Shown: one piece after another, positions 16,263-26,111 of the stretch
How the letters are laid out: the number at the start of each line of letters is the position of its first letter
Position numbering within the stretch: position 1 is the first letter of the stretch
NCBI RefSeq assembly: GCF_001194135.2
Contig: NC_069010.1
Location: forward strand, 275,958 to 317,195
Direction: 5' to 3'
DNA: 41,238 bases
DNA from: Octopus bimaculoides
Lineage: Eukaryota
Translations under genes and position numbers: made by a program
The notes under the pieces: generated by a model
Database searches by the model: none
Seen by the model: the letters and a program-made list of their open reading frames with translations, nothing else
Told to the model about the DNA's origin: nothing

Positions 16263-16998
16263 GTAAGTTGCCTCTGTTTTCTTCAGACTCTTTCACTCAC
16301 GATATAATTCTCAATGTTTAATATTAAATCATTTGCCGATTTTTCTCATTCACATTAAGACATTATAATCTGCTTTCTTCTTCTTGCTTTTCTTCTATTT
16401 ACTTCTTCTTCTTGTAGTTCCTGATTTTCTCCTTCTTCGTCTTTTTCTTCTCCACCTCCTCCTCCTTCTCTTCCTCGTATTCCTTCTTATTCTTCTTGTT
16501 CTATTCTTCCTCTACTTCTTCTTCTTCTTCTGTTTCTTTGTTTTCTTTTTGTTCTTCACATTCTTCTTTCTTTATCTCTTTCTTCATCCTATTTCTCTTC
16601 CTATCTATCTTCTTCCTGTTCTTCTTCTGTCCTTTTTTCTTCTTCTTCACCTTCTTTTCTTTTCTTCTTCATTTGATATTTATCATATTACTGGTATCAT
16701 TAGCATTATCTTCATTAACATCATCATCGCCATGATTCTCATGATCAGTGCTAGAATTTTACCATCATCAGCATAATCCTCATCATTTTTATCATCATAA
16801 TCGTTATCATCATCATGATCGGCATTTTCATCATCATCATCATCTTCAGCATCTTCATCGTGAAGATAATGATGATTATGATTATTATGCTGATGATCGT
16901 TATCATTATCACTATCATCACCATTACCTGCATCATTTTCATCTAAGGACTCAGCGACCTCATATATTATTTCTAAACATGTCCCTTTTATAATGCAG

Positions 16999-17070
16999 AT
17001 ATCTTAACTGGAATCGAATTAAGGACATCAAAGATGGATCGTTTACAAATCTCTCCAATTTACAAAGATT
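16999..17070 (+). CDS. LRR exon L2: YLNWNRIKDIKDGSFTNLSNLQR(L)
   Basis: gcag|A...TT|gtaagt, 72 nt. Confidence 0.95.
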
Positions 17071-17613
17071 GTAAGTTTCCTCTTCTGCTTTCTTCAGACT
17101 CTTTCACTCACGATATAATTCTCAATGTTTAATATTAAATCATTTGCAGATTTGTACCATTCACATTAGTGAGACATATGTAATCTGCATCCTTCTTGCT
17201 TTCATTCTCCTTATTCTTCATCTTTTACTTCTTTTCTTACACCTCCTCCTCCTCCTTCTCCTCCTCCTCCTCCTCCTCCTCCTCCTACTACTACTCTTGT
17301 TTCTATTCCTTCCTGTTCTTGTTCTAATCATTCTCTTATTTTCTCCATCTTATTCTTCTTCTTCCATCGATTCTCCTTCTTCGTCTTCGTCTTCTTCGTC
17401 TTCTTTTTCGTCTTCTTCTTCATCTTATACTTTATCTTCTTTTTCTTCTTCCTTCGCTTCTCCTCCTCCATTATCATCACCATCTTCATCTTCCTTTCTT
17501 CCTCATCCTCCTAATTATTCTCCATATTCCTCTCACTCTCATCACTCAATATTGAACATTGTATCACGAAACTATTCTATATTATTTATAATCTTCTCCC
17601 TTTTATAATGCAG

Positions 17614-17685
17614 ATATCTTTTTCACAATCAAATTGAAGACATCGAAGATGGATCGTTTGCGAATCTCCCCAACTTAAAAGTATT
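17614..17685 (+). CDS. LRR exon L3: YLFHNQIEDIEDGSFANLPNLKV(L)
   Basis: gcag|A...TT|gtaagt, 72 nt. Confidence 0.95.
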
Positions 17686-19186
17686 GTAAGTTGCCTCTTC
17701 TGTTTTCTTCAGACTCTTTCACTCACGATATAATTCTCAATGTTTAATATTAAATCATTTACCGATTTGTCTCATTCACATTAGTCAGACATATTTAATC
17801 TGCTTTCTTATTGCTTTCATTCTTCTTATTTTTCATATTTTACTTCTTTATTCTTCTTCTTCCCCCTTCCTCCTCGTCCTCCTCCTCGTCCTCCTCCTCC
17901 ACCTCGTCCTCCTCCTCCTCGTCCTCCTCCTCCTCGTCCTCCTCCTCCTCCTCNNNNNNNNNNNNNNNNNNNNNNNNNNNNNNNNNNNNNNNNNNTCTAG
18001 TCCTCTTGCATCAACTTTCTTTCTTTCTTTTTGTTCCCCCTCTTCTTTGTCTTCTTCCTTTTATTCCCCCTGTTGTTCTTGTTCTTCCTCTTCTTCTTTT
18101 TCTCCCACCTATTCATCGCGTTTTCCTTCTTTTTCTTATTCTTTTATTGCTTCTGTTAATTTATAAGTATCATAATTATTATGATCAGCATCATCGTCAT
18201 CATTATCTTCATCATCATGTTTGTTATTTACCATCATCAGCATCATTCTCATAATCATCATATTCATTATTGTCATCATAATTTTCATCGCCTGCGTCAT
18301 CATTATCAACATTATTGTCTTTATCATCTTCTGTATCATCCTGATAATTTGAATTATCATAACCATTATTATCATCATCAACAGCATCTTTATCATCATC
18401 AGCGTCATAATCATCATCATCATCGGCATCATCACCTTTTTCTTCTTCCGTTGTTTCCTCTTATTCATCACGTTCTTCTACTTTTTCTACTTCATCTTCT
18501 TTTATTTCTTCTATTAATTCATAATTATTAGCATTATTATGATCATTATCACCATCATTATCTTCATCATCATCGTCATCATCATTAACACCATCACGAT
18601 ATTCATCATTATTTTCATAATCATCGTCATTATTATCGTCATCATCCACATCATCATTATCACCATCATCATAATCATCATCAAGAGCATCAGCATTTTC
18701 AACACCTGATGATGATGCTAATGATCATGATTATTATCTTTATCATTATCGTCATCATTATCAGCATCATCATCATTAGAATCACCGTTTCCACCATTTT
18801 CATCATAAGCAACACCCTCATTATAATGAACATGGTCATCATCATCAACATCCTCATGATCATAATCATTCTCGACATCAACTACATCTGCATCAAAACC
18901 AGCAATATCATCATCATCATCATCATCACGTTTATCATTGTCCCCATCATCATTATTATCATGATCATCATGATCATCATCATCACACATCAAGATCACC
19001 ATTGTAATCGTCATCGTCACCGTCATCGTGATCAGAATCCCCATTATCATCACCATCTTCATAATCCTTTCTTTCTCATCCTCCTAATTATTCTCCATAT
19101 TCCTCTCACTCTTATCACTCAATATTGAACATTGTATCATGAAACTATTCTATATTATTTCTAATCTTCTCCCTTTTTTAATGCAG

Positions 19187-19258
19187 AAATCTTTACGACA
19201 ATCAAATTAAACACATCAAAGATGGATTGTTTTCAAATCTCTACAATTTAAAAGAATT
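19187..19258 (+). CDS. LRR exon L4: NLYDNQIKHIKDGLFSNLYNLKE(L)
   Basis: gcag|A...TT|gtaagt, 72 nt. Confidence 0.95.
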
Positions 19259-23267: not shown

Positions 23268-23339
23268 ACGTCTTTACGGCAATCAAATGACGCACATCAA
23301 AGCTGGATGGTTTGAAAATCTCTACAATTTAGAAACATT
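23268..23339 (+). CDS. LRR exon L7: RLYGNQMTHIKAGWFENLYNLET(L)
   Basis: gcag|A...TT|gtaagt, 72 nt. Confidence 0.95.
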
Positions 23340-24297
23340 GTAAGTTGCCTCTTCTGTTTTCTTCAGACTCTTTCATTCACGATATAATTCTCAATGTTTG
23401 ATATTAAATCATTTGCCGATTTTTCTCATTCACATTAGTAACACATATTTAATCTCCTTTCTTCCTCTTACTTCCACTTTCTCTTCTCCTTTTACTTATT
23501 TTTCTTCCACTTTTTTCCTCCTCCCTCCTCCTCCCTCTCCTCCTACTTCCCTACTCCCCCTCATCCACCTTCTCATATTCCGTCTTCTTCTACTAATCTT
23601 TTTTCTTCTGTTTTCTTCTTCCTCATCTTTCATCTCTCCTTCTCCTCCTCCTTTTCTTCATCTTCTTTATTTTGTTTTTCTTCTCGTTCTTCTTTCTTTC
23701 TTTTTCTTCTTCTTCTTTAACTTTTTCTTTCCTTTTTCTTGTTCCCTTTCTTTTCGATTCTTCGTCATTTGATATTTATCAACATATTATGATCATTAGC
23801 TTCATCTTCATTAACTTCATCATCGCCAAGATTGTAATTAACAGTAATAAAATTTCATCATCATCTTTGTCATTATCGTGACCGTTTCGTCATCAATATA
23901 ATCATTATCATTTTCATCATTACGATCTTCATCATCATCATCATCATCAACATTATTTGCATTTTTATTATCATCATCACCACGGTCTTACTCATCTACA
24001 TCAACTTTATCATCGTAATCATCATCGACATCATGAACATAGATTTTGATCGCCAGTATCATCATGATCATCAACGTTAGACTTACTATCATCATGATCG
24101 CGATCGTAATGAACATCATCATCATCATCGTTATAAGCATCCAAATCATAATCATCTTCTTCATATTCCTTTCTTCCTCCTCCTCATCCTAATTATTCTC
24201 TATATTCCTCTCACTGCTAACACTCAATGTTGAATATTGTATCACGAAACCATTATTATATTGTTTTATTTCTAAACTTCTCCCTTTTATAACGCAG

Positions 24298-24369
24298 AAC
24301 TGCTTCCTCGAACAGAATTACGGACATCGAAGATGGATCGTTTACAAATCTCTCCAATTTAAAAGATTT
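24298..24369 (+). CDS. LRR exon L8: TASSNRITDIEDGSFTNLSNLKD(L)
   Basis: gcag|A...TT|gtaagt, 72 nt; the consensus Leu at position 2 is Ala. Confidence 0.9.
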
Positions 24370-24742
24370 GTAAGTTGCCTATGTATTCTTGAGACTCTTT
24401 TAGTTGCGATATAATTCTCAATGTTTAATATTAAATCATTTGCCGATTTTTCTCATTCACGTTAGTAAGAAATATTTAATCTCCTTTCTTCTTCCTTTCA
24501 TTCCTCTTCTTCCTCTACTACTCTTCTTTTTCTTCTCTTCCTCATCCTTCTTCTTTATTCTTCTTTTCTCCGTCTTCTACTACGTCTTCATTTTCTTTTC
24601 CTTCTTGTTTATCTTCTTGTACTGCTTTCCTCTTTTCGTCTCCTTCGTCTCCATATTCCTCTCACTCTTATCACTCAATATTGAACATTGTATCACGAAA
24701 CAATTCTATATTATTTCTAAACTTCTCCCTTTTATAATGCAG

Positions 24743-24814
24743 AAATCTTTACAACAACTCAATTGCCGTCATCAAAGATGGATGGTTTTCAAATCTCTGT
24801 AATTTAAAAACATT
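24743..24814 (+). CDS. LRR exon L9: NLYNNSIAVIKDGWFSNLCNLKT(L)
   Basis: gcag|A...TT|gtaagt, 72 nt. Confidence 0.95.
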
Positions 24815-26111
24815 GTAAGTTGCCTCTGTTTTCTTCGCTCACGATATAACTGTCAATGTTTGATATTAAATCATTTGTCGATTTTTATCATTCACATTAG
24901 GAAGCCAAATGTAATCTGCTTTGTTGTTGTTGTTGTTGTTGTTGTTCTTCTTCTTCTTAACCTTCTCCTGTTTCTTCTTCTTCTTCTTAACCTTCTCCTG
25001 TTTCCTCTTCTTCTTCTTCTTCTTTTCCTCCTCCTGCTCATCCCATCTTCTCCTCCTCCTCCTATTCATTCTTCTTATTCTTCTTGTTCTACTCTTCTTC
25101 TTTTACTTTTTTTCTTCTTCACGTCCTTCTCTCTAGCTTTATCGTTTTCTTCTTCCTAACTTCTTGATCTTCATCTCGTTCTTCTTTTGTCTTTGCTCTT
25201 CTTCATCCTCTTCGTATTTATATTCTTGTTGTCCTTCGGTTCTTCTACACCTTCTCTTCTATTCTTCTTCATTTGATAATTATCATAACATTATGATCAT
25301 TAGCGTCGTCTTCATTACCATTATTCTTGTGAGGATTGTCATGATCTGCATTAGTATTTCATCATCATCTTTATCATTATTATGACCATGTCAATGATCA
25401 TCTTCATCATAATCTTCATCATCATCAACTTCATTGGCTTCTTCTTCATCTTCACCATCCTCATTATTTCCATCATCATTGTCATCATCATCACGATCTT
25501 CATCATAATCTTCATCATCATCCTCATTATTTCCATCATCATCATCACGATCATCATCATCACGATCTTCATCATCATGATCTTCATCATAATCGGCATT
25601 ATCGTCATCGTCATCATCAGCGTCATTATCGTCATCTCATTAATCATCACCATAGTAATAATCGTTAAGAACTTCATTATCATCACTCAACTTCATCAAC
25701 TTCATCATTGTTATCATCATCATGGCCAACATCATTCTCATCATCATCACCATCATCATCATCGTCATCATCATCTTAATCATCACGATCTTCATCATCG
25801 TCGCCGTCATTTTATCAACTACAGCATCATTATTATCATCATTATCATCAATACAAACTTCATTATCATCCTCATAAATGTAATCATTTAACGTCATGAT
25901 GATGATCATCACGGTCATCATCATCCCAATCATCATTATCACCATCACGTTTTTCATCATTTTCATTATCATTGTCATTATAATCCCCATCTTTCTCCTC
26001 CATATCATCATCCCCATCATTACCATCATCATCATCATCATCATCATCATCATTATCATCACCATTTTCATCATCATCATAATTACCATCAGCATCATCG
26101 TTATTATTATC

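What the first reader, a model, noticed from the sequence alone, without database searches (positions are those of the whole stretch)
16312..24867. Complementary 14-nt arms near both ends of the array introns, with only G-U-compatible substitutions (Dscam-like docking/selector candidate)
Seen: 39-52 nt after every donor lies CAATGTTTAATATT (16312, 17123, 17738, 19308, 20688, 22213, 23392, 24419, 24854). 52-58 nt before the acceptors of L3, L4, L5, L7, L8 and L9 lies AATATTGAACATTG (17548, 19121, 20495, 23202, 24226, 24677). The two pair over 14 bp (13 Watson-Crick + 1 G-U). All 7 substitutions in intact arms (5 distinct positions) are A>G opposite U or C>U opposite G: CAGTG after L4; TTTGATATT after L7 and L9; AGTATTGAATATTG before L5; AATGTTGAATATTG before L8. 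Pairing is kept on the + (pre-mRNA) strand but would become A-C mismatches on the - strand. Because the arms repeat, any donor-side arm could pair with any acceptor-side arm, either bridging a donor to a distant acceptor or looping out exons. Established: competing docking/selector pairing drives exon choice in arthropod Dscam1. Inference: RNA-structure-guided combinatorial LRR splicing. Alternatives are an ADAR-guiding duplex (coleoids recode heavily by A-to-I) or palindromic DNA sites (TCAATATTGA, TTTAATATTAAA).
Basis: partly seen in the sequence, partly recalled or inferred. Interest (0 to 1): 0.9.

Follow-up and report, generated by a model that had tools for sequence, protein, structure and literature searches.

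The report
Repeated complementary motifs flanking octopus LRR exons
Each exon in a tandem array of octopus leucine-rich-repeat exons carries a short pair of mutually complementary intron motifs, but larger comparisons suggest these are mostly inherited baggage of the duplicated, homogenised intron flanks, not a proven Dscam-like splicing switch.

Summary
Nine 72-nt single-LRR exons (16191-24814) are each followed, 39-52 nt into the intron, by CAATGTTTAATATT. Six are preceded by AATATTGAACATTG, 52-58 nt upstream. The two motifs pair over 14 bp, and the seven substitutions in this window are all wobble-compatible.

- **Not special within the flanks:** the arms sit inside about 110-nt intron flanks that are conserved as a whole (89-94% identity, against 75% for the exons).
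- **Wider sample:** across 27-28 paralogous units, six of twelve distinct arm variants break pairing. None is compensated.
- **Recent copy:** against a collinear copy of the array, the arms diverge 4.1% and the intron interior 4.9%.
- **Divergent paralogue:** an annotated paralogue with the same exon structure has no such arms.
- **Competing repeats:** the introns hold 30-67-nt inverted repeats, longer than the arms.
- **Architecture:** there is no single docking site, and the exons are not mutually exclusive, so this is not Dscam-like.

Three points favour a function. Pair-breaking variants are about twofold fewer than the flank background predicts (P 0.005-0.035). Local folds often form the helix. 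An Octopus sinensis homologue has annotated isoforms that differ by whole LRR exons.

Most likely this is a by-product of tandem duplication and concerted evolution. A modest splicing role is not excluded.

The parts
16191..16262 (+). LRR exon L1 (72 nt, phase 1, YLSYNQIEDIEVGSFANLYSLEK)
   Evidence: AG|72 nt|GTAAG, open frame; the concatenated exons match LRR_8 at E 5.8e-84
16999..17070 (+). LRR exon L2
17614..17685 (+). LRR exon L3
19187..19258 (+). LRR exon L4
20567..20638 (+). LRR exon L5
22092..22163 (+). LRR exon L6
23268..23339 (+). LRR exon L7
24298..24369 (+). LRR exon L8
24743..24814 (+). LRR exon L9
31189..31260 (+). LRR exon L10. It has unrelated flanks and no arms, and it resembles the last LRR before the LRRCT in Octopus homologues.
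16312..16325 (+). donor-side arm after L1, CAATGTTTAATATT
17123..17136 (+). donor-side arm after L2
17738..17751 (+). donor-side arm after L3
19308..19321 (+). donor-side arm after L4, CAGTGTTTAATATT
20688..20701 (+). donor-side arm after L5
22213..22226 (+). donor-side arm after L6
23392..23405 (+). donor-side arm after L7, CAATGTTTGATATT
24419..24432 (+). donor-side arm after L8
24854..24867 (+). donor-side arm after L9, CAATGTTTGATATT. Its own intron holds no acceptor-side partner.
17548..17561 (+). acceptor-side arm before L3, AATATTGAACATTG
19121..19134 (+). acceptor-side arm before L4
20495..20508 (+). acceptor-side arm before L5, AGTATTGAATATTG
22032..22040 (+). degraded acceptor-side arm before L6 (ATTATTGAA, then a 5-nt deletion)
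23202..23215 (+). acceptor-side arm before L7
24226..24239 (+). acceptor-side arm before L8, AATGTTGAATATTG
24677..24690 (+). acceptor-side arm before L9
19075..19186 (+). representative conserved acceptor flank (about 112 nt, including the branch-site-like CTAAT and the pyrimidine tract). The same block precedes L3-L9.
   Evidence: mean identity 89% among L3-L9
19259..19393 (+). representative conserved donor flank (about 100-135 nt). The same block follows L1-L9.
   Evidence: mean identity 94%
17954..17995 (.). assembly gap inside the (CCT)n interior of intron L3-L4
20793..21223 (.). assembly gap inside the interior of intron L5-L6. The collinear contig C31274 has a gap at the same place.

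Best explanation
The window holds a tandem array of nine single-LRR cassette exons (72 nt, phase 1). They belong to the octopus-specific family of LRR-bearing adhesion GPCRs in Octopus bimaculoides. Each duplicated unit is an acceptor flank of about 112 nt, the exon, and a donor flank of about 100-135 nt. These are separated by strand-asymmetric low-complexity sequence, CT-rich then ATC-rich.

Both arms are two-unit repeats of a heptamer built on the palindromic core AATATT: donor CAATGTT-TAATATT, acceptor AATATTG-AA(C/T)ATTG. Because the core is a palindrome, same-strand copies with the same 7-nt period are automatically near-complementary.

The arms were copied along with every unit. They stay alike because the intron flanks as a whole are homogenised among units (concerted evolution), while the exons diversify. 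Their ability to pair is therefore most likely a by-product. It is not shown to be selected, and it is not a docking/selector switch. If the helix forms in the pre-mRNA, the likeliest effect is a mild one: bridging donor and branch region within an intron, or looping out a single exon.

Shown: the anatomy, the family membership, the flank homogeneity, the lack of covariation and the near-neutral recent divergence. Inferred: gene conversion as the homogenising process, and the absence of function.
For: - The whole flank is conserved, not only the arms. Exon identity is 75%, donor flank 94% and acceptor flank 89%. Collinear intron interiors of the three-exon higher-order repeat are 76-80% identical, and pS among exons is 0.20.
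- By cells, the arms are not outliers within the flanks, ranking 45/94 and 15/87 among 14-nt windows.
- The heptamer composition can be read directly from the sequence. The family consensus of the acceptor arm is (AATATTG)x2. A second pairing register exists.
- Family-wide there are 12 distinct arm variants, 6 compatible and 6 breaking, with 0 compensatory pairs.
- Against the collinear copy C31274, divergence is 4.1% in the arms plus one indel, 4.9% in the interior, 3.3-4.7% in the flanks and 6.9% in the exons. Purifying selection strong enough to explain the three- to four-fold inter-unit excess similarity of the flanks would predict about 10 flank mismatches; 29 were seen.
- Paralogue XP_052833813.1 on C29 has 11 consecutive 72-nt LRR exons, all present in the annotated protein. 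Its flanks have diverged, and its complementary runs are no longer than in shuffles.
- Introns L1-L2 and L9-L10 lack an acceptor arm, and L6's is degraded. A 146-nt intron in the C30:3.025 Mb paralogue lacks both arms.
- Longer inverted repeats (30-67 nt) exist in the introns. In a 1.78-kb three-unit fold the arm helices have a probability of 0.015 or less.
Against: - A complementary run of 14 was never reached in 2000 shuffles.
- Pair-breaking variants are depleted, 6 observed against 12.5-15.8 expected from the flank background (Poisson P 0.005-0.035). Compatible variants occur at the background rate, 6 against 4.3-5.2.
- Within the window, 5 of 6 arm variants are A>G or C>T, against 27% in the other flank columns.
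- By distinct variants, the arms are among the least variable 14-nt windows (8/94 and 4/87).
- In isolated unit or intron contexts the helix is in the MFE in 3 of 6 exon-spanning cases and 2-3 of 5 intron-spanning cases. The pyrimidine-rich introns offer few competitors locally.
- C31274 could be a decaying duplicate, which would weaken the neutral-rate argument.
- Gene conversion is inferred, not demonstrated.
Confidence: 0.55

Rival explanations
1. The arms form a functional pre-mRNA helix specific to this young gene subfamily. One version pairs within an intron: the donor arm of exon i pairs with the acceptor arm of exon i+1, collapsing a 0.4-1.5-kb low-complexity intron to an effective length of about 100 nt and favouring orderly consecutive splicing. 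The other version pairs across an exon: the arms sit symmetrically about 50 nt on each side and close a loop of about 175 nt, favouring skipping or back-splicing of LRR cassettes. Because all arms are alike, which pairing forms would depend on transcription kinetics.
For: - The 14-bp complementarity is beyond the shuffle maximum.
- Breaking variants are depleted about twofold while compatible ones occur at the background rate.
- The window-only variant spectrum is 5 of 6 wobble-compatible against a 27% background.
- The helix has probability 0.63-0.95 in three exon-spanning contexts and about 0.8 in two short-intron contexts.
- The arms are placed symmetrically, 52 nt upstream and 49-52 nt downstream of the exon.
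- O. sinensis LOC115215701 isoforms X1-X4 differ only by 96- or 144-aa blocks cut at LRR-exon boundaries.
- The only short (146-nt) intron seen lacks both arms.
Against: - There is no compensatory change in 20 units.
- Six breaking variants and two arm deletions persist in units with intact exons and splice sites.
- Divergence from C31274 is near neutral.
- The arms are absent from the C29 paralogue, whose exons are spliced in series.
- Three of nine array introns lack a pair.
- The helix is weak and AU-rich (-10 to -12 kcal/mol) and disappears in larger folds.
- Stronger competing inverted repeats are present.
- The isoform evidence comes from another gene in another species. It rests on predicted models in near-identical repeats, where junction reads are ambiguous.
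Confidence: 0.3
2. This is a Dscam1-type docking/selector system. Competing base-pairing between one docking site and many selector sequences activates exactly one exon of a mutually exclusive cluster.
For: There are tandem homologous exons of equal length with similar flanking introns and repeated complementary intronic elements. Such clusters are enriched for competing structures (PMC6071210).
Against: - Both arm types are repeated, nine and six times, so there is no unique docking site.
- The arms are near-identical instead of being diverged selectors.
- LRR exons are used in series in the annotated homologues: 11 consecutive exons in XP_052833813.1 and 17 or more LRRs in O. sinensis X1. 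A protein carrying one LRR from the array would make no structural sense.
- There is no covariation.
Confidence: 0.03
3. The motifs act at the DNA level. The AATATT-cored heptamer repeats (TTTAATATTAAA, TCAATATTGA, multiple TAAT cores) would be protein-binding sites. Alternatively, together with the flanks, they are the homology tracts where unequal exchange or gene conversion between units begins.
For: - Palindromic cores are present in both arms.
- The flanks are homogenised among units while the exons and interiors diverge.
- There is mosaic indel sharing between units, such as the TCT indel in the donor flank.
- One unit has had its exon deleted precisely between the flanks (L035).
Against: - The palindromes are broken in several copies (TTTGATATT, TCAGTATTGA, TCATTATTGA).
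- The A>G excess over T>C in the arms is strand-specific, which a double-stranded site would not predict. The counts are small (5 against 3).
- There is no direct evidence of binding or of recombination breakpoints at the arms.
Confidence: 0.08
4. The arm duplex guides ADAR for A-to-I editing of nearby sequence.
For: Coleoids edit heavily (own knowledge). The duplex would lie about 50 nt from the exons.
Against: A helix of 14 AU-rich base pairs is shorter than typical ADAR substrates of about 20 bp or more (own knowledge). It does not include exon sequence. Much longer imperfect duplexes (30-67 nt) are available in the same introns.
Confidence: 0.03

Closest known systems
Competing intronic RNA structures created by tandem exon duplication (Ivanov & Pervouchine 2018, PMC6071210); Dscam1 exon 6 docking/selector
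   Same: There are tandem homologous exons of equal length. The flanking intron sequence was duplicated with the exon, and complementary intronic boxes were repeated as a consequence.
   Different: In that model only one arm of a stem is duplicated, which gives many selectors for one docking site and mutually exclusive choice. Here both arms are duplicated with every unit, the exons are used in series, and no covariation is seen.
[quoted passage not shown]
   Same: One box lies about 50 nt inside the donor and one about 25-30 nt upstream of the branch-site-like CTAAT, in six of nine array introns.
   Different: The boxes are identical in every intron, so they cannot specify the cognate partner. 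Three introns lack them, and no functional or covariation evidence exists here.
Inverted repeats in flanking introns that promote exon circularisation or skipping (Alu-type and shorter repeats; own knowledge)
   Same: Reverse-complementary sequences sit in the introns on both sides of six exons, symmetrically placed.
   Different: The arms are only 14 nt, while functional repeats are usually at least 30-40 nt (own knowledge). A 72-nt single-exon circle would be unusually small, and no junction data are available.
One-LRR-per-72-nt-exon arrays with exon shuffling and positive selection: Ectocarpus LRR-ROCO genes (PMC3341825, PMC11378527); exonic modularity of LRRs enabling alternative splicing in NLRP3 (PMC6642158); Slit genes (own knowledge)
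   Same: Each LRR is a single 72-nt (24-aa) symmetric exon. Arrays grow by exon duplication. Non-framework codons here show pN/pS of 1.62. In-frame LRR-skipping isoforms are annotated in a homologue.
   Different: This is a different kingdom and a different gene family (adhesion GPCR ectodomain). The brown-alga work does not describe complementary intron motifs.
Octopus-specific adhesion-GPCR expansion with LRR N-termini (Ritschard et al. 2019, PMC6408891)
   Same: The best protein matches are Octopus LRR + GAIN/GPS + 7tm_2 proteins at 46-47% identity. 7tm_2 exons of a neighbouring family member lie in the window.
   Different: No annotated protein contains these exact exons. Neither the 5' exon nor the LRRCT/7TM part of this particular gene was found on the + strand within 20 kb, in sequence with many gaps.

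Membership tests
Dscam-type docking/selector mutually exclusive splicing | A cluster of exons of which exactly one is included per transcript | tested here: not met
   Annotated homologues use the 72-nt LRR exons in series: 11 consecutive exons in XP_052833813.1 and 17 or more LRRs in O. sinensis X1. No transcript data exist for the window gene itself.
Dscam-type docking/selector mutually exclusive splicing | One docking site complementary to many selector sequences, so that pairings are mutually exclusive | tested here: not met
   There are nine donor-side and six acceptor-side copies, and no unique element upstream or downstream of the array.
Dscam-type docking/selector mutually exclusive splicing | Pairing maintained in evolution (compensatory changes or conservation above background) | tested here: not met
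   0 of 14 pairs has a two-sided change in 20 units. The arms diverge 4.1% and the interior 4.9% against the collinear copy. The arms are absent from the C29 paralogue.
Intron-bridging complementary boxes | Complementary boxes near the 5' splice site and near the branch point or 3' splice site of the same intron | tested here: met
   Present in introns L2-L3, L3-L4, L4-L5, L6-L7, L7-L8 and L8-L9. Absent or degraded in L1-L2, L5-L6 and L9-L10.
Intron-bridging complementary boxes | Selective maintenance of the pairing | tested here: inconclusive
   Breaking variants number 6 against 12.5-15.8 expected (P 0.005-0.035). Against this, there is no covariation and recent divergence is neutral.
Intron-bridging complementary boxes | The helix forms in the transcript and affects splicing efficiency | not testable with these tools
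   Only thermodynamic predictions are available, and they depend on context.
Flanking inverted repeats driving circRNA or exon skipping | Reverse-complementary sequences in the upstream and downstream introns of the exon | tested here: met
   L3, L4, L5, L7, L8 and L9 each have 14/14 pairs across the exon.
Flanking inverted repeats driving circRNA or exon skipping | Repeat length and stability sufficient to compete (usually at least 30-40 nt; own knowledge) | tested here: not met
   The arms are 14 nt with a duplex energy of -10 to -12 kcal/mol. Longer competing repeats are present.
Flanking inverted repeats driving circRNA or exon skipping | Back-splice or skipping junction reads | not testable with these tools
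   No RNA-seq access. The only indirect evidence is the set of annotated LRR-skipping isoforms in an O. sinensis homologue.
ADAR editing-site complementary sequence | A duplex of about 20 bp or more that includes the edited site (own knowledge) | tested here: not met
   The helix is 14 bp, entirely intronic and about 50 nt from the exon.
LRR-containing adhesion GPCR (host gene) | LRR domain | tested here: met
   LRR_8 at E 5.8e-84 on the spliced exons.
LRR-containing adhesion GPCR (host gene) | GAIN/GPS and 7tm_2 downstream in the same gene | tested here: inconclusive
   The closest proteins have this architecture. On the + strand downstream of L10 no LRRCT, GPS or 7TM exon was found within about 20 kb of heavily gapped sequence. 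The 7tm_2 exons in the window belong to the upstream neighbour.

The most novel reading that the evidence does not exclude
In a young, octopus-specific subfamily of adhesion GPCRs, the conserved intron flanks and their repeated complementary arms set, stochastically or by cell type, which hypervariable LRR cassette exons enter the mRNA (skipping, or exon circles). That would give combinatorial ectodomain diversity, a cephalopod counterpart of Dscam1 or clustered-protocadherin diversification built on LRR modules.
Probability: 0.1. Interest if true: 0.8.

Novelty: new member of a known kind. Interest (0 to 1): 0.35.

Why it matters
If the arms did steer exon use, octopus adhesion GPCRs would gain a combinatorial, RNA-structure-guided way to vary a ligand-binding LRR surface. 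That bears on how cephalopods diversify neuronal or chemotactile receptors. It would also be a natural case in which both arms of a stem were multiplied by tandem exon duplication.

As the evidence stands, the lesson is cautionary. In tandem exon arrays, repeated complementary intron motifs and 'wobble-only' substitution patterns can arise from shared ancestry, palindromic cores and concerted evolution. They need out-of-window paralogues to be judged.

The locus is still worth a look for a different reason. It combines single-LRR exons with pN/pS above 1 at surface codons, homogenised intron flanks, and annotated LRR-skipping isoforms in a sister species.

Tried and rejected
- **MITE or terminal-inverted-repeat origin of the arms:** rejected. 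The conserved unit extends about 45 nt and about 70 nt beyond the arms, no target-site duplication is evident, and the flanks occur only with LRR exons in the genome.
- **A known RNA family in the flanks or introns:** only sub-threshold low-complexity hits, the best being mir-598 at 34 bits against a gathering score of 69.
- **Cross-species DNA for covariation:** the O. sinensis genes for P0121, P0243 and P0244 span 102-209 kb, so no DNA was returned. Shorter isoforms are not on record.
- **An annotated O. bimaculoides protein containing the window exons:** none was found among proteins of 131-418, 550-1750 or 1540-4900 aa.
- **An apparent 'swapped block' complementarity in the C29 paralogue** (donor AAATATG-TAATGTC, acceptor GACATTC-AATATT): seen by eye in one unit type, but the run-length tests gave nothing beyond shuffles, with 1 of 19 tests at P=0.02. 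My first idea, that the second acceptor heptamer is a subfamily-specific insertion, was withdrawn after pairwise alignment.
- **Global folding as evidence:** the result depends on context (against 25) and is not decisive either way.
- **Pfam on the 52-116-aa TM7 fragment:** no hit because it is too short. Its identity was established instead by tblastn against family members.

Full report
**Observation.** CAATGTTTAATATT, or a one-substitution variant, occurs nine times on the + strand between 16312 and 24867. AATATTGAACATTG, or a variant, occurs six times between 17548 and 24690. Shuffles expect about 1.5 matches at up to two mismatches. A scan for AG|72 nt|GTAAG finds nine open 72-nt exons at 16191, 16999, 17614, 19187, 20567, 22092, 23268, 24298 and 24743, plus a tenth at 31189 with unrelated flanks. 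Each encodes one canonical 24-residue LRR in phase 1. The spliced product matches LRR_8 at E 5.8e-84. The donor arm starts 39-52 nt after each exon, and the acceptor arm ends 52-58 nt before L3, L4, L5, L7, L8 and L9. L1 and L2 have a different upstream flank with no arm, and L6 has a degraded one. All intact cognate pairs give 14/14 pairs. The seven substitutions in the window are A>G or C>T, as stated.

**Assembly gaps.** The gaps at 17954-17995 and 20793-21223 lie in the low-complexity interior of introns L3-L4 and L5-L6, away from exons and arms. The homologous gapless intron L6-L7 is collinear across the first gap. The second gap coincides with a gap in the collinear contig C31274, so a hidden unit there cannot be strictly excluded.

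**What the locus is.**
- The genome is Octopus bimaculoides. Contig C29 has the length (11,991,813) of the record carrying XP_052833813.1, and that protein's exons are found exactly there.
- The best protein matches to the spliced array are Octopus LRR + GAIN/GPS + 7tm_2 proteins at 46-47% identity. This is the octopus-specific adhesion-GPCR expansion with LRR N-termini described by Ritschard et al. (PMC6408891).
- Window 571-702 and 15114-15269 are 7TM exons of an upstream family member. A paralogous array lies on the minus strand at C30:326-360 kb.
- No annotated protein contains the window's exons. Neither a 5' exon nor LRRCT/7TM exons of this gene were found on the + strand in the heavily gapped neighbourhood. 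Expression of this particular array is therefore unproven.

**The repeat unit.** The repeated unit is much larger than the arms: about 112 nt of acceptor flank, the exon, and about 100-135 nt of donor flank. Between units lies strand-asymmetric low complexity, CT-rich then ATC-rich, with GC skew about -0.6. The flanks are more alike than the exons. Exon identity is 75% (codon positions 1+2 at 72%, position 3 at 82%), donor flank 94%, and acceptor flank 89% among L3-L9. Among 29 distinct exons, pN/pS is 1.18 overall, 1.62 at non-framework codons and 0.29 at framework codons, with pS 0.20. L3-L5 and L6-L8 form a three-exon higher-order repeat whose intron interiors align collinearly at 76-80% identity. 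The copies are therefore not independent.

**Anatomy of the arms.** Both arms are two units of a heptamer with the palindromic core AATATT. The donor reads CAATGTT-TAATATT and is preceded by a third unit, TAATTCT. The acceptor reads AATATTG-AACATTG, and the family-wide consensus is the perfect tandem AATATTG-AATATTG. A palindromic core repeated with the same period on one strand is close to self-complementary by construction. This explains how the pairing potential can arise without an inverted duplication. RNAalifold in fact prefers a second register, AATATTGA/TCAATGTT plus ATTGTATC/GATATAAT.

**Is it more than chance?** For run length, yes. An ungapped complementary run of 14 (G-U allowed) was never reached in 2000 dinucleotide shuffles of the consensus flanks, where the maximum was 13. 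For energy, no. The best duplex lies at the 9.5th percentile of shuffles.

**Evolutionary tests.** I collected 28 acceptor flanks and 27 donor flanks from the window, the minus-strand paralogue, C31274, C105513, C30:3.025 Mb and small contigs.
- *Window only:* arm variants are 5 of 6 A>G or C>T, against 27% in the other flank columns.
- *Family-wide:* there are 12 distinct arm variants. Six are compatible (five A>G, plus C/T opposite G). Six are breaking: acceptor A2>T, position 10 to G, T13>C; donor C1>G, T8>A, T11>C. In addition there is one 5-nt deletion and one complete deletion of a donor arm.
- *Covariation:* none. In 20 units, 96.4% of cells pair, there are 0 two-sided changes, and the shuffles are identical to the observed values.
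- *Against a composition-matched flank background:* compatible variants occur at the expected rate (6 against 4.3-5.2). Breaking variants are about twofold depleted (6 against 12.5-15.8; Poisson P 0.005-0.035 depending on the background). This is a nominal signal in favour of constraint. It rests on few, related and post-hoc selected sites.
- *Recent comparison:* against the collinear contig C31274, the arms diverge 4.1% (4 of 98, plus one indel), the intron interior 4.9%, the flanks 3.3-4.7% and the exons 6.9%. There is no detectable recent constraint on arms or flanks. The inter-unit similarity of the flanks is thus better explained by homogenisation (inferred gene conversion or unequal exchange) than by purifying selection. 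One caveat is that C31274 might be a decaying duplicate.
- *Divergent paralogue:* XP_052833813.1 on C29 has 11 consecutive 72-nt LRR exons, all in the annotated protein. Its flanks have diverged, and its donor-acceptor complementary runs are no longer than in shuffles, with 1 of 19 tests at P=0.02. The arms are therefore not a conserved requirement for splicing such arrays.

**Folding.** In isolated contexts the arm helix is in the MFE in 3 of 6 exon-spanning cases and 2-3 of 5 intron-spanning cases, with probabilities up to 0.95. The pyrimidine-rich introns offer few local competitors. In a 1.78-kb three-unit transcript every arm-arm pairing has probability 0.015 or less. GAT-rich patches form inverted repeats of 30-67 nt at 70-88% complementarity with the ATC tracts. 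No Rfam family reaches its threshold.

**Splicing evidence from relatives.** O. sinensis LOC115215701 is an LRR-GAIN-7TM protein with four RefSeq isoforms of 1394, 1298, 1298 and 1250 aa. They are identical except for the absence of 96- or 144-aa blocks, that is four or six LRRs. The blocks are cut exactly at the position of the LRR exon boundary, and the two 1298-aa isoforms lack different blocks. This fits cassette-like use of LRR exons. It concerns another gene in another species, however, and rests on predicted models in near-identical repeats, where junction reads are ambiguous. I could not obtain that gene's DNA to ask whether it has arms.

**Mechanism.**
- *By-product (confidence 0.55):* the arms are a by-product. 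Palindrome-cored heptamer repeats sit inside intron flanks that were duplicated with every LRR exon and are kept alike by concerted evolution, while the exons diversify.
- *Functional helix (0.3):* the helix is used in this young subfamily. It either bridges donor and branch region within an intron or, given the symmetric placement about 50 nt on each side, loops out single exons.
- *Other readings:* a Dscam-type docking/selector switch (0.03) fails its defining features. A DNA-level role (0.08) and an ADAR guide (0.03) have little support.

**Comparison with what is known.**
- The nearest framework is the tandem-duplication origin of competing intronic structures (PMC6071210). Here both arms were multiplied and the exons are not mutually exclusive.
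- At the gene-architecture level the closest analogues are the Ectocarpus LRR-ROCO genes, in which each LRR is a single 72-nt exon subject to shuffling and positive selection (PMC3341825; PMC11378527).
- The exonic modularity of LRRs that permits alternative splicing in NLRP3 is a further analogue (PMC6642158).

**Verdict.** It is a new member of a known kind, complementary intron motifs propagated by tandem exon duplication. Interest is about 0.35. It comes mainly from the hypervariable single-LRR exon array in an octopus adhesion-GPCR family and from the untested possibility of combinatorial LRR exon use.

Noticed in passing
window 571-702 (+) and 15114-15269 (+): These are exons of an upstream 7tm_2 adhesion/secretin-type GPCR. 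The TM3 region is 48% identical to O. sinensis LOC115215701 residues 1172-1215. The TM7 region carries the FNTLQGLFIFIFYC motif and is 73% identical to a 7tm_2 exon at C30:2980454-2980741. The gap at 14513-15111 hides the start of the TM5-7 exon. The LRR array therefore sits in a tandem cluster of such genes.
   Followed up: partly
window 16191-24814 and paralogous exons (L031-L037, L006, L017, L018, L021): The LRR exons are more divergent than their intron flanks. pN/pS is 1.62 at non-framework codons and 0.29 at framework codons, with pS 0.20. This is the signature of diversifying selection on the LRR surface, combined with homogenised flanks.
   Followed up: partly
window 16330-16960, 17160-17500, 17800-19070, 19380-20440, 21224-21980, 22290-23150, 23450-24170, 24480-24650, 24900-26100: The intron interiors are strongly strand-asymmetric low complexity. 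A CT-rich block (CUU/CCU repeats) is followed by an ATC-rich block ((AUC)n, that is repeated UCAU = YCAY), with GC skew about -0.6. On the RNA these would resemble clusters of PTB-type and Nova-type binding motifs (own knowledge). This has not been tested.
   Followed up: no
window 16055-16104, 16861-16909, 18707-18746, 20124-20190, 21681-21730: Short GAT-rich 'antisense' patches form inverted repeats of 30-67 nt (70-88% complementary) with the ATC tracts. Some of them span exons. They are longer potential dsRNA than the 14-nt arms.
   Followed up: partly
window 17686-20638 versus 22164-24369: There is a three-exon higher-order repeat: L3-L4-L5 and their introns are collinear with L6-L7-L8 at 76-84% identity. 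L5 and L8 share a 6-nt insertion in the acceptor flank.
   Followed up: partly
L034 (G000:C31274:1-5898): This unplaced contig is collinear with window 16781-22298 at 89-98% identity, so it is a haplotig or a very recent duplicate. It jumps from the L2 unit to window 18048 across a 275-N gap, so the L3 unit is missing or hidden. It also has a gap at the same place as window 20793-21223.
   Followed up: partly
L035 (G000:C105513) about 1152-1201 (-) and 3925-3974 (-): In one unit the exon and the 3' part of the acceptor flank are deleted, so the acceptor flank is fused directly to GTAAGTTGCC. In another unit the donor flank is interrupted by an unrelated insertion just before the arm.
   Followed up: no
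L036 (G000:C30:3020001-3030000) 5315-5604 (-): A more divergent paralogue (flanks 70-84% identical) has two LRR exons separated by an intron of only 146 nt. That intron lacks both arms, and the donor arm is precisely deleted. A 7tm_2 exon lies 45 kb downstream on the same strand (C30:2980454-2980741).
   Followed up: partly
window 5200-9430 (+); also 11716-13802 (-), 35206-36389 (-), 37448-38647 (+), 40372-41010 (-): There are open frames resembling retrotransposon polymerase genes: reverse transcriptase with a YLDD motif, and integrase. They are interrupted by assembly gaps and sit in the introns or intergenic DNA around the array. I only noted their presence.
   Followed up: no
O. sinensis LOC115215701 (P0243, P0242, P0141, P0241): Four annotated isoforms differ only by in-frame blocks of four or six near-identical LRRs, cut at LRR-exon boundaries. 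The two isoforms of equal length lack different blocks.
   Followed up: yes
G000:C29:10413001-10447000 (L044-L047): The RefSeq protein named 'toll-like receptor 5' (XP_052833813.1) is built from 72-nt single-LRR exons and belongs to the same LRR family as the adhesion-GPCR ectodomains. Many loci on C29, C30 and unplaced contigs match its post-LRR exons, which points to a large lineage-specific family.
   Followed up: partly
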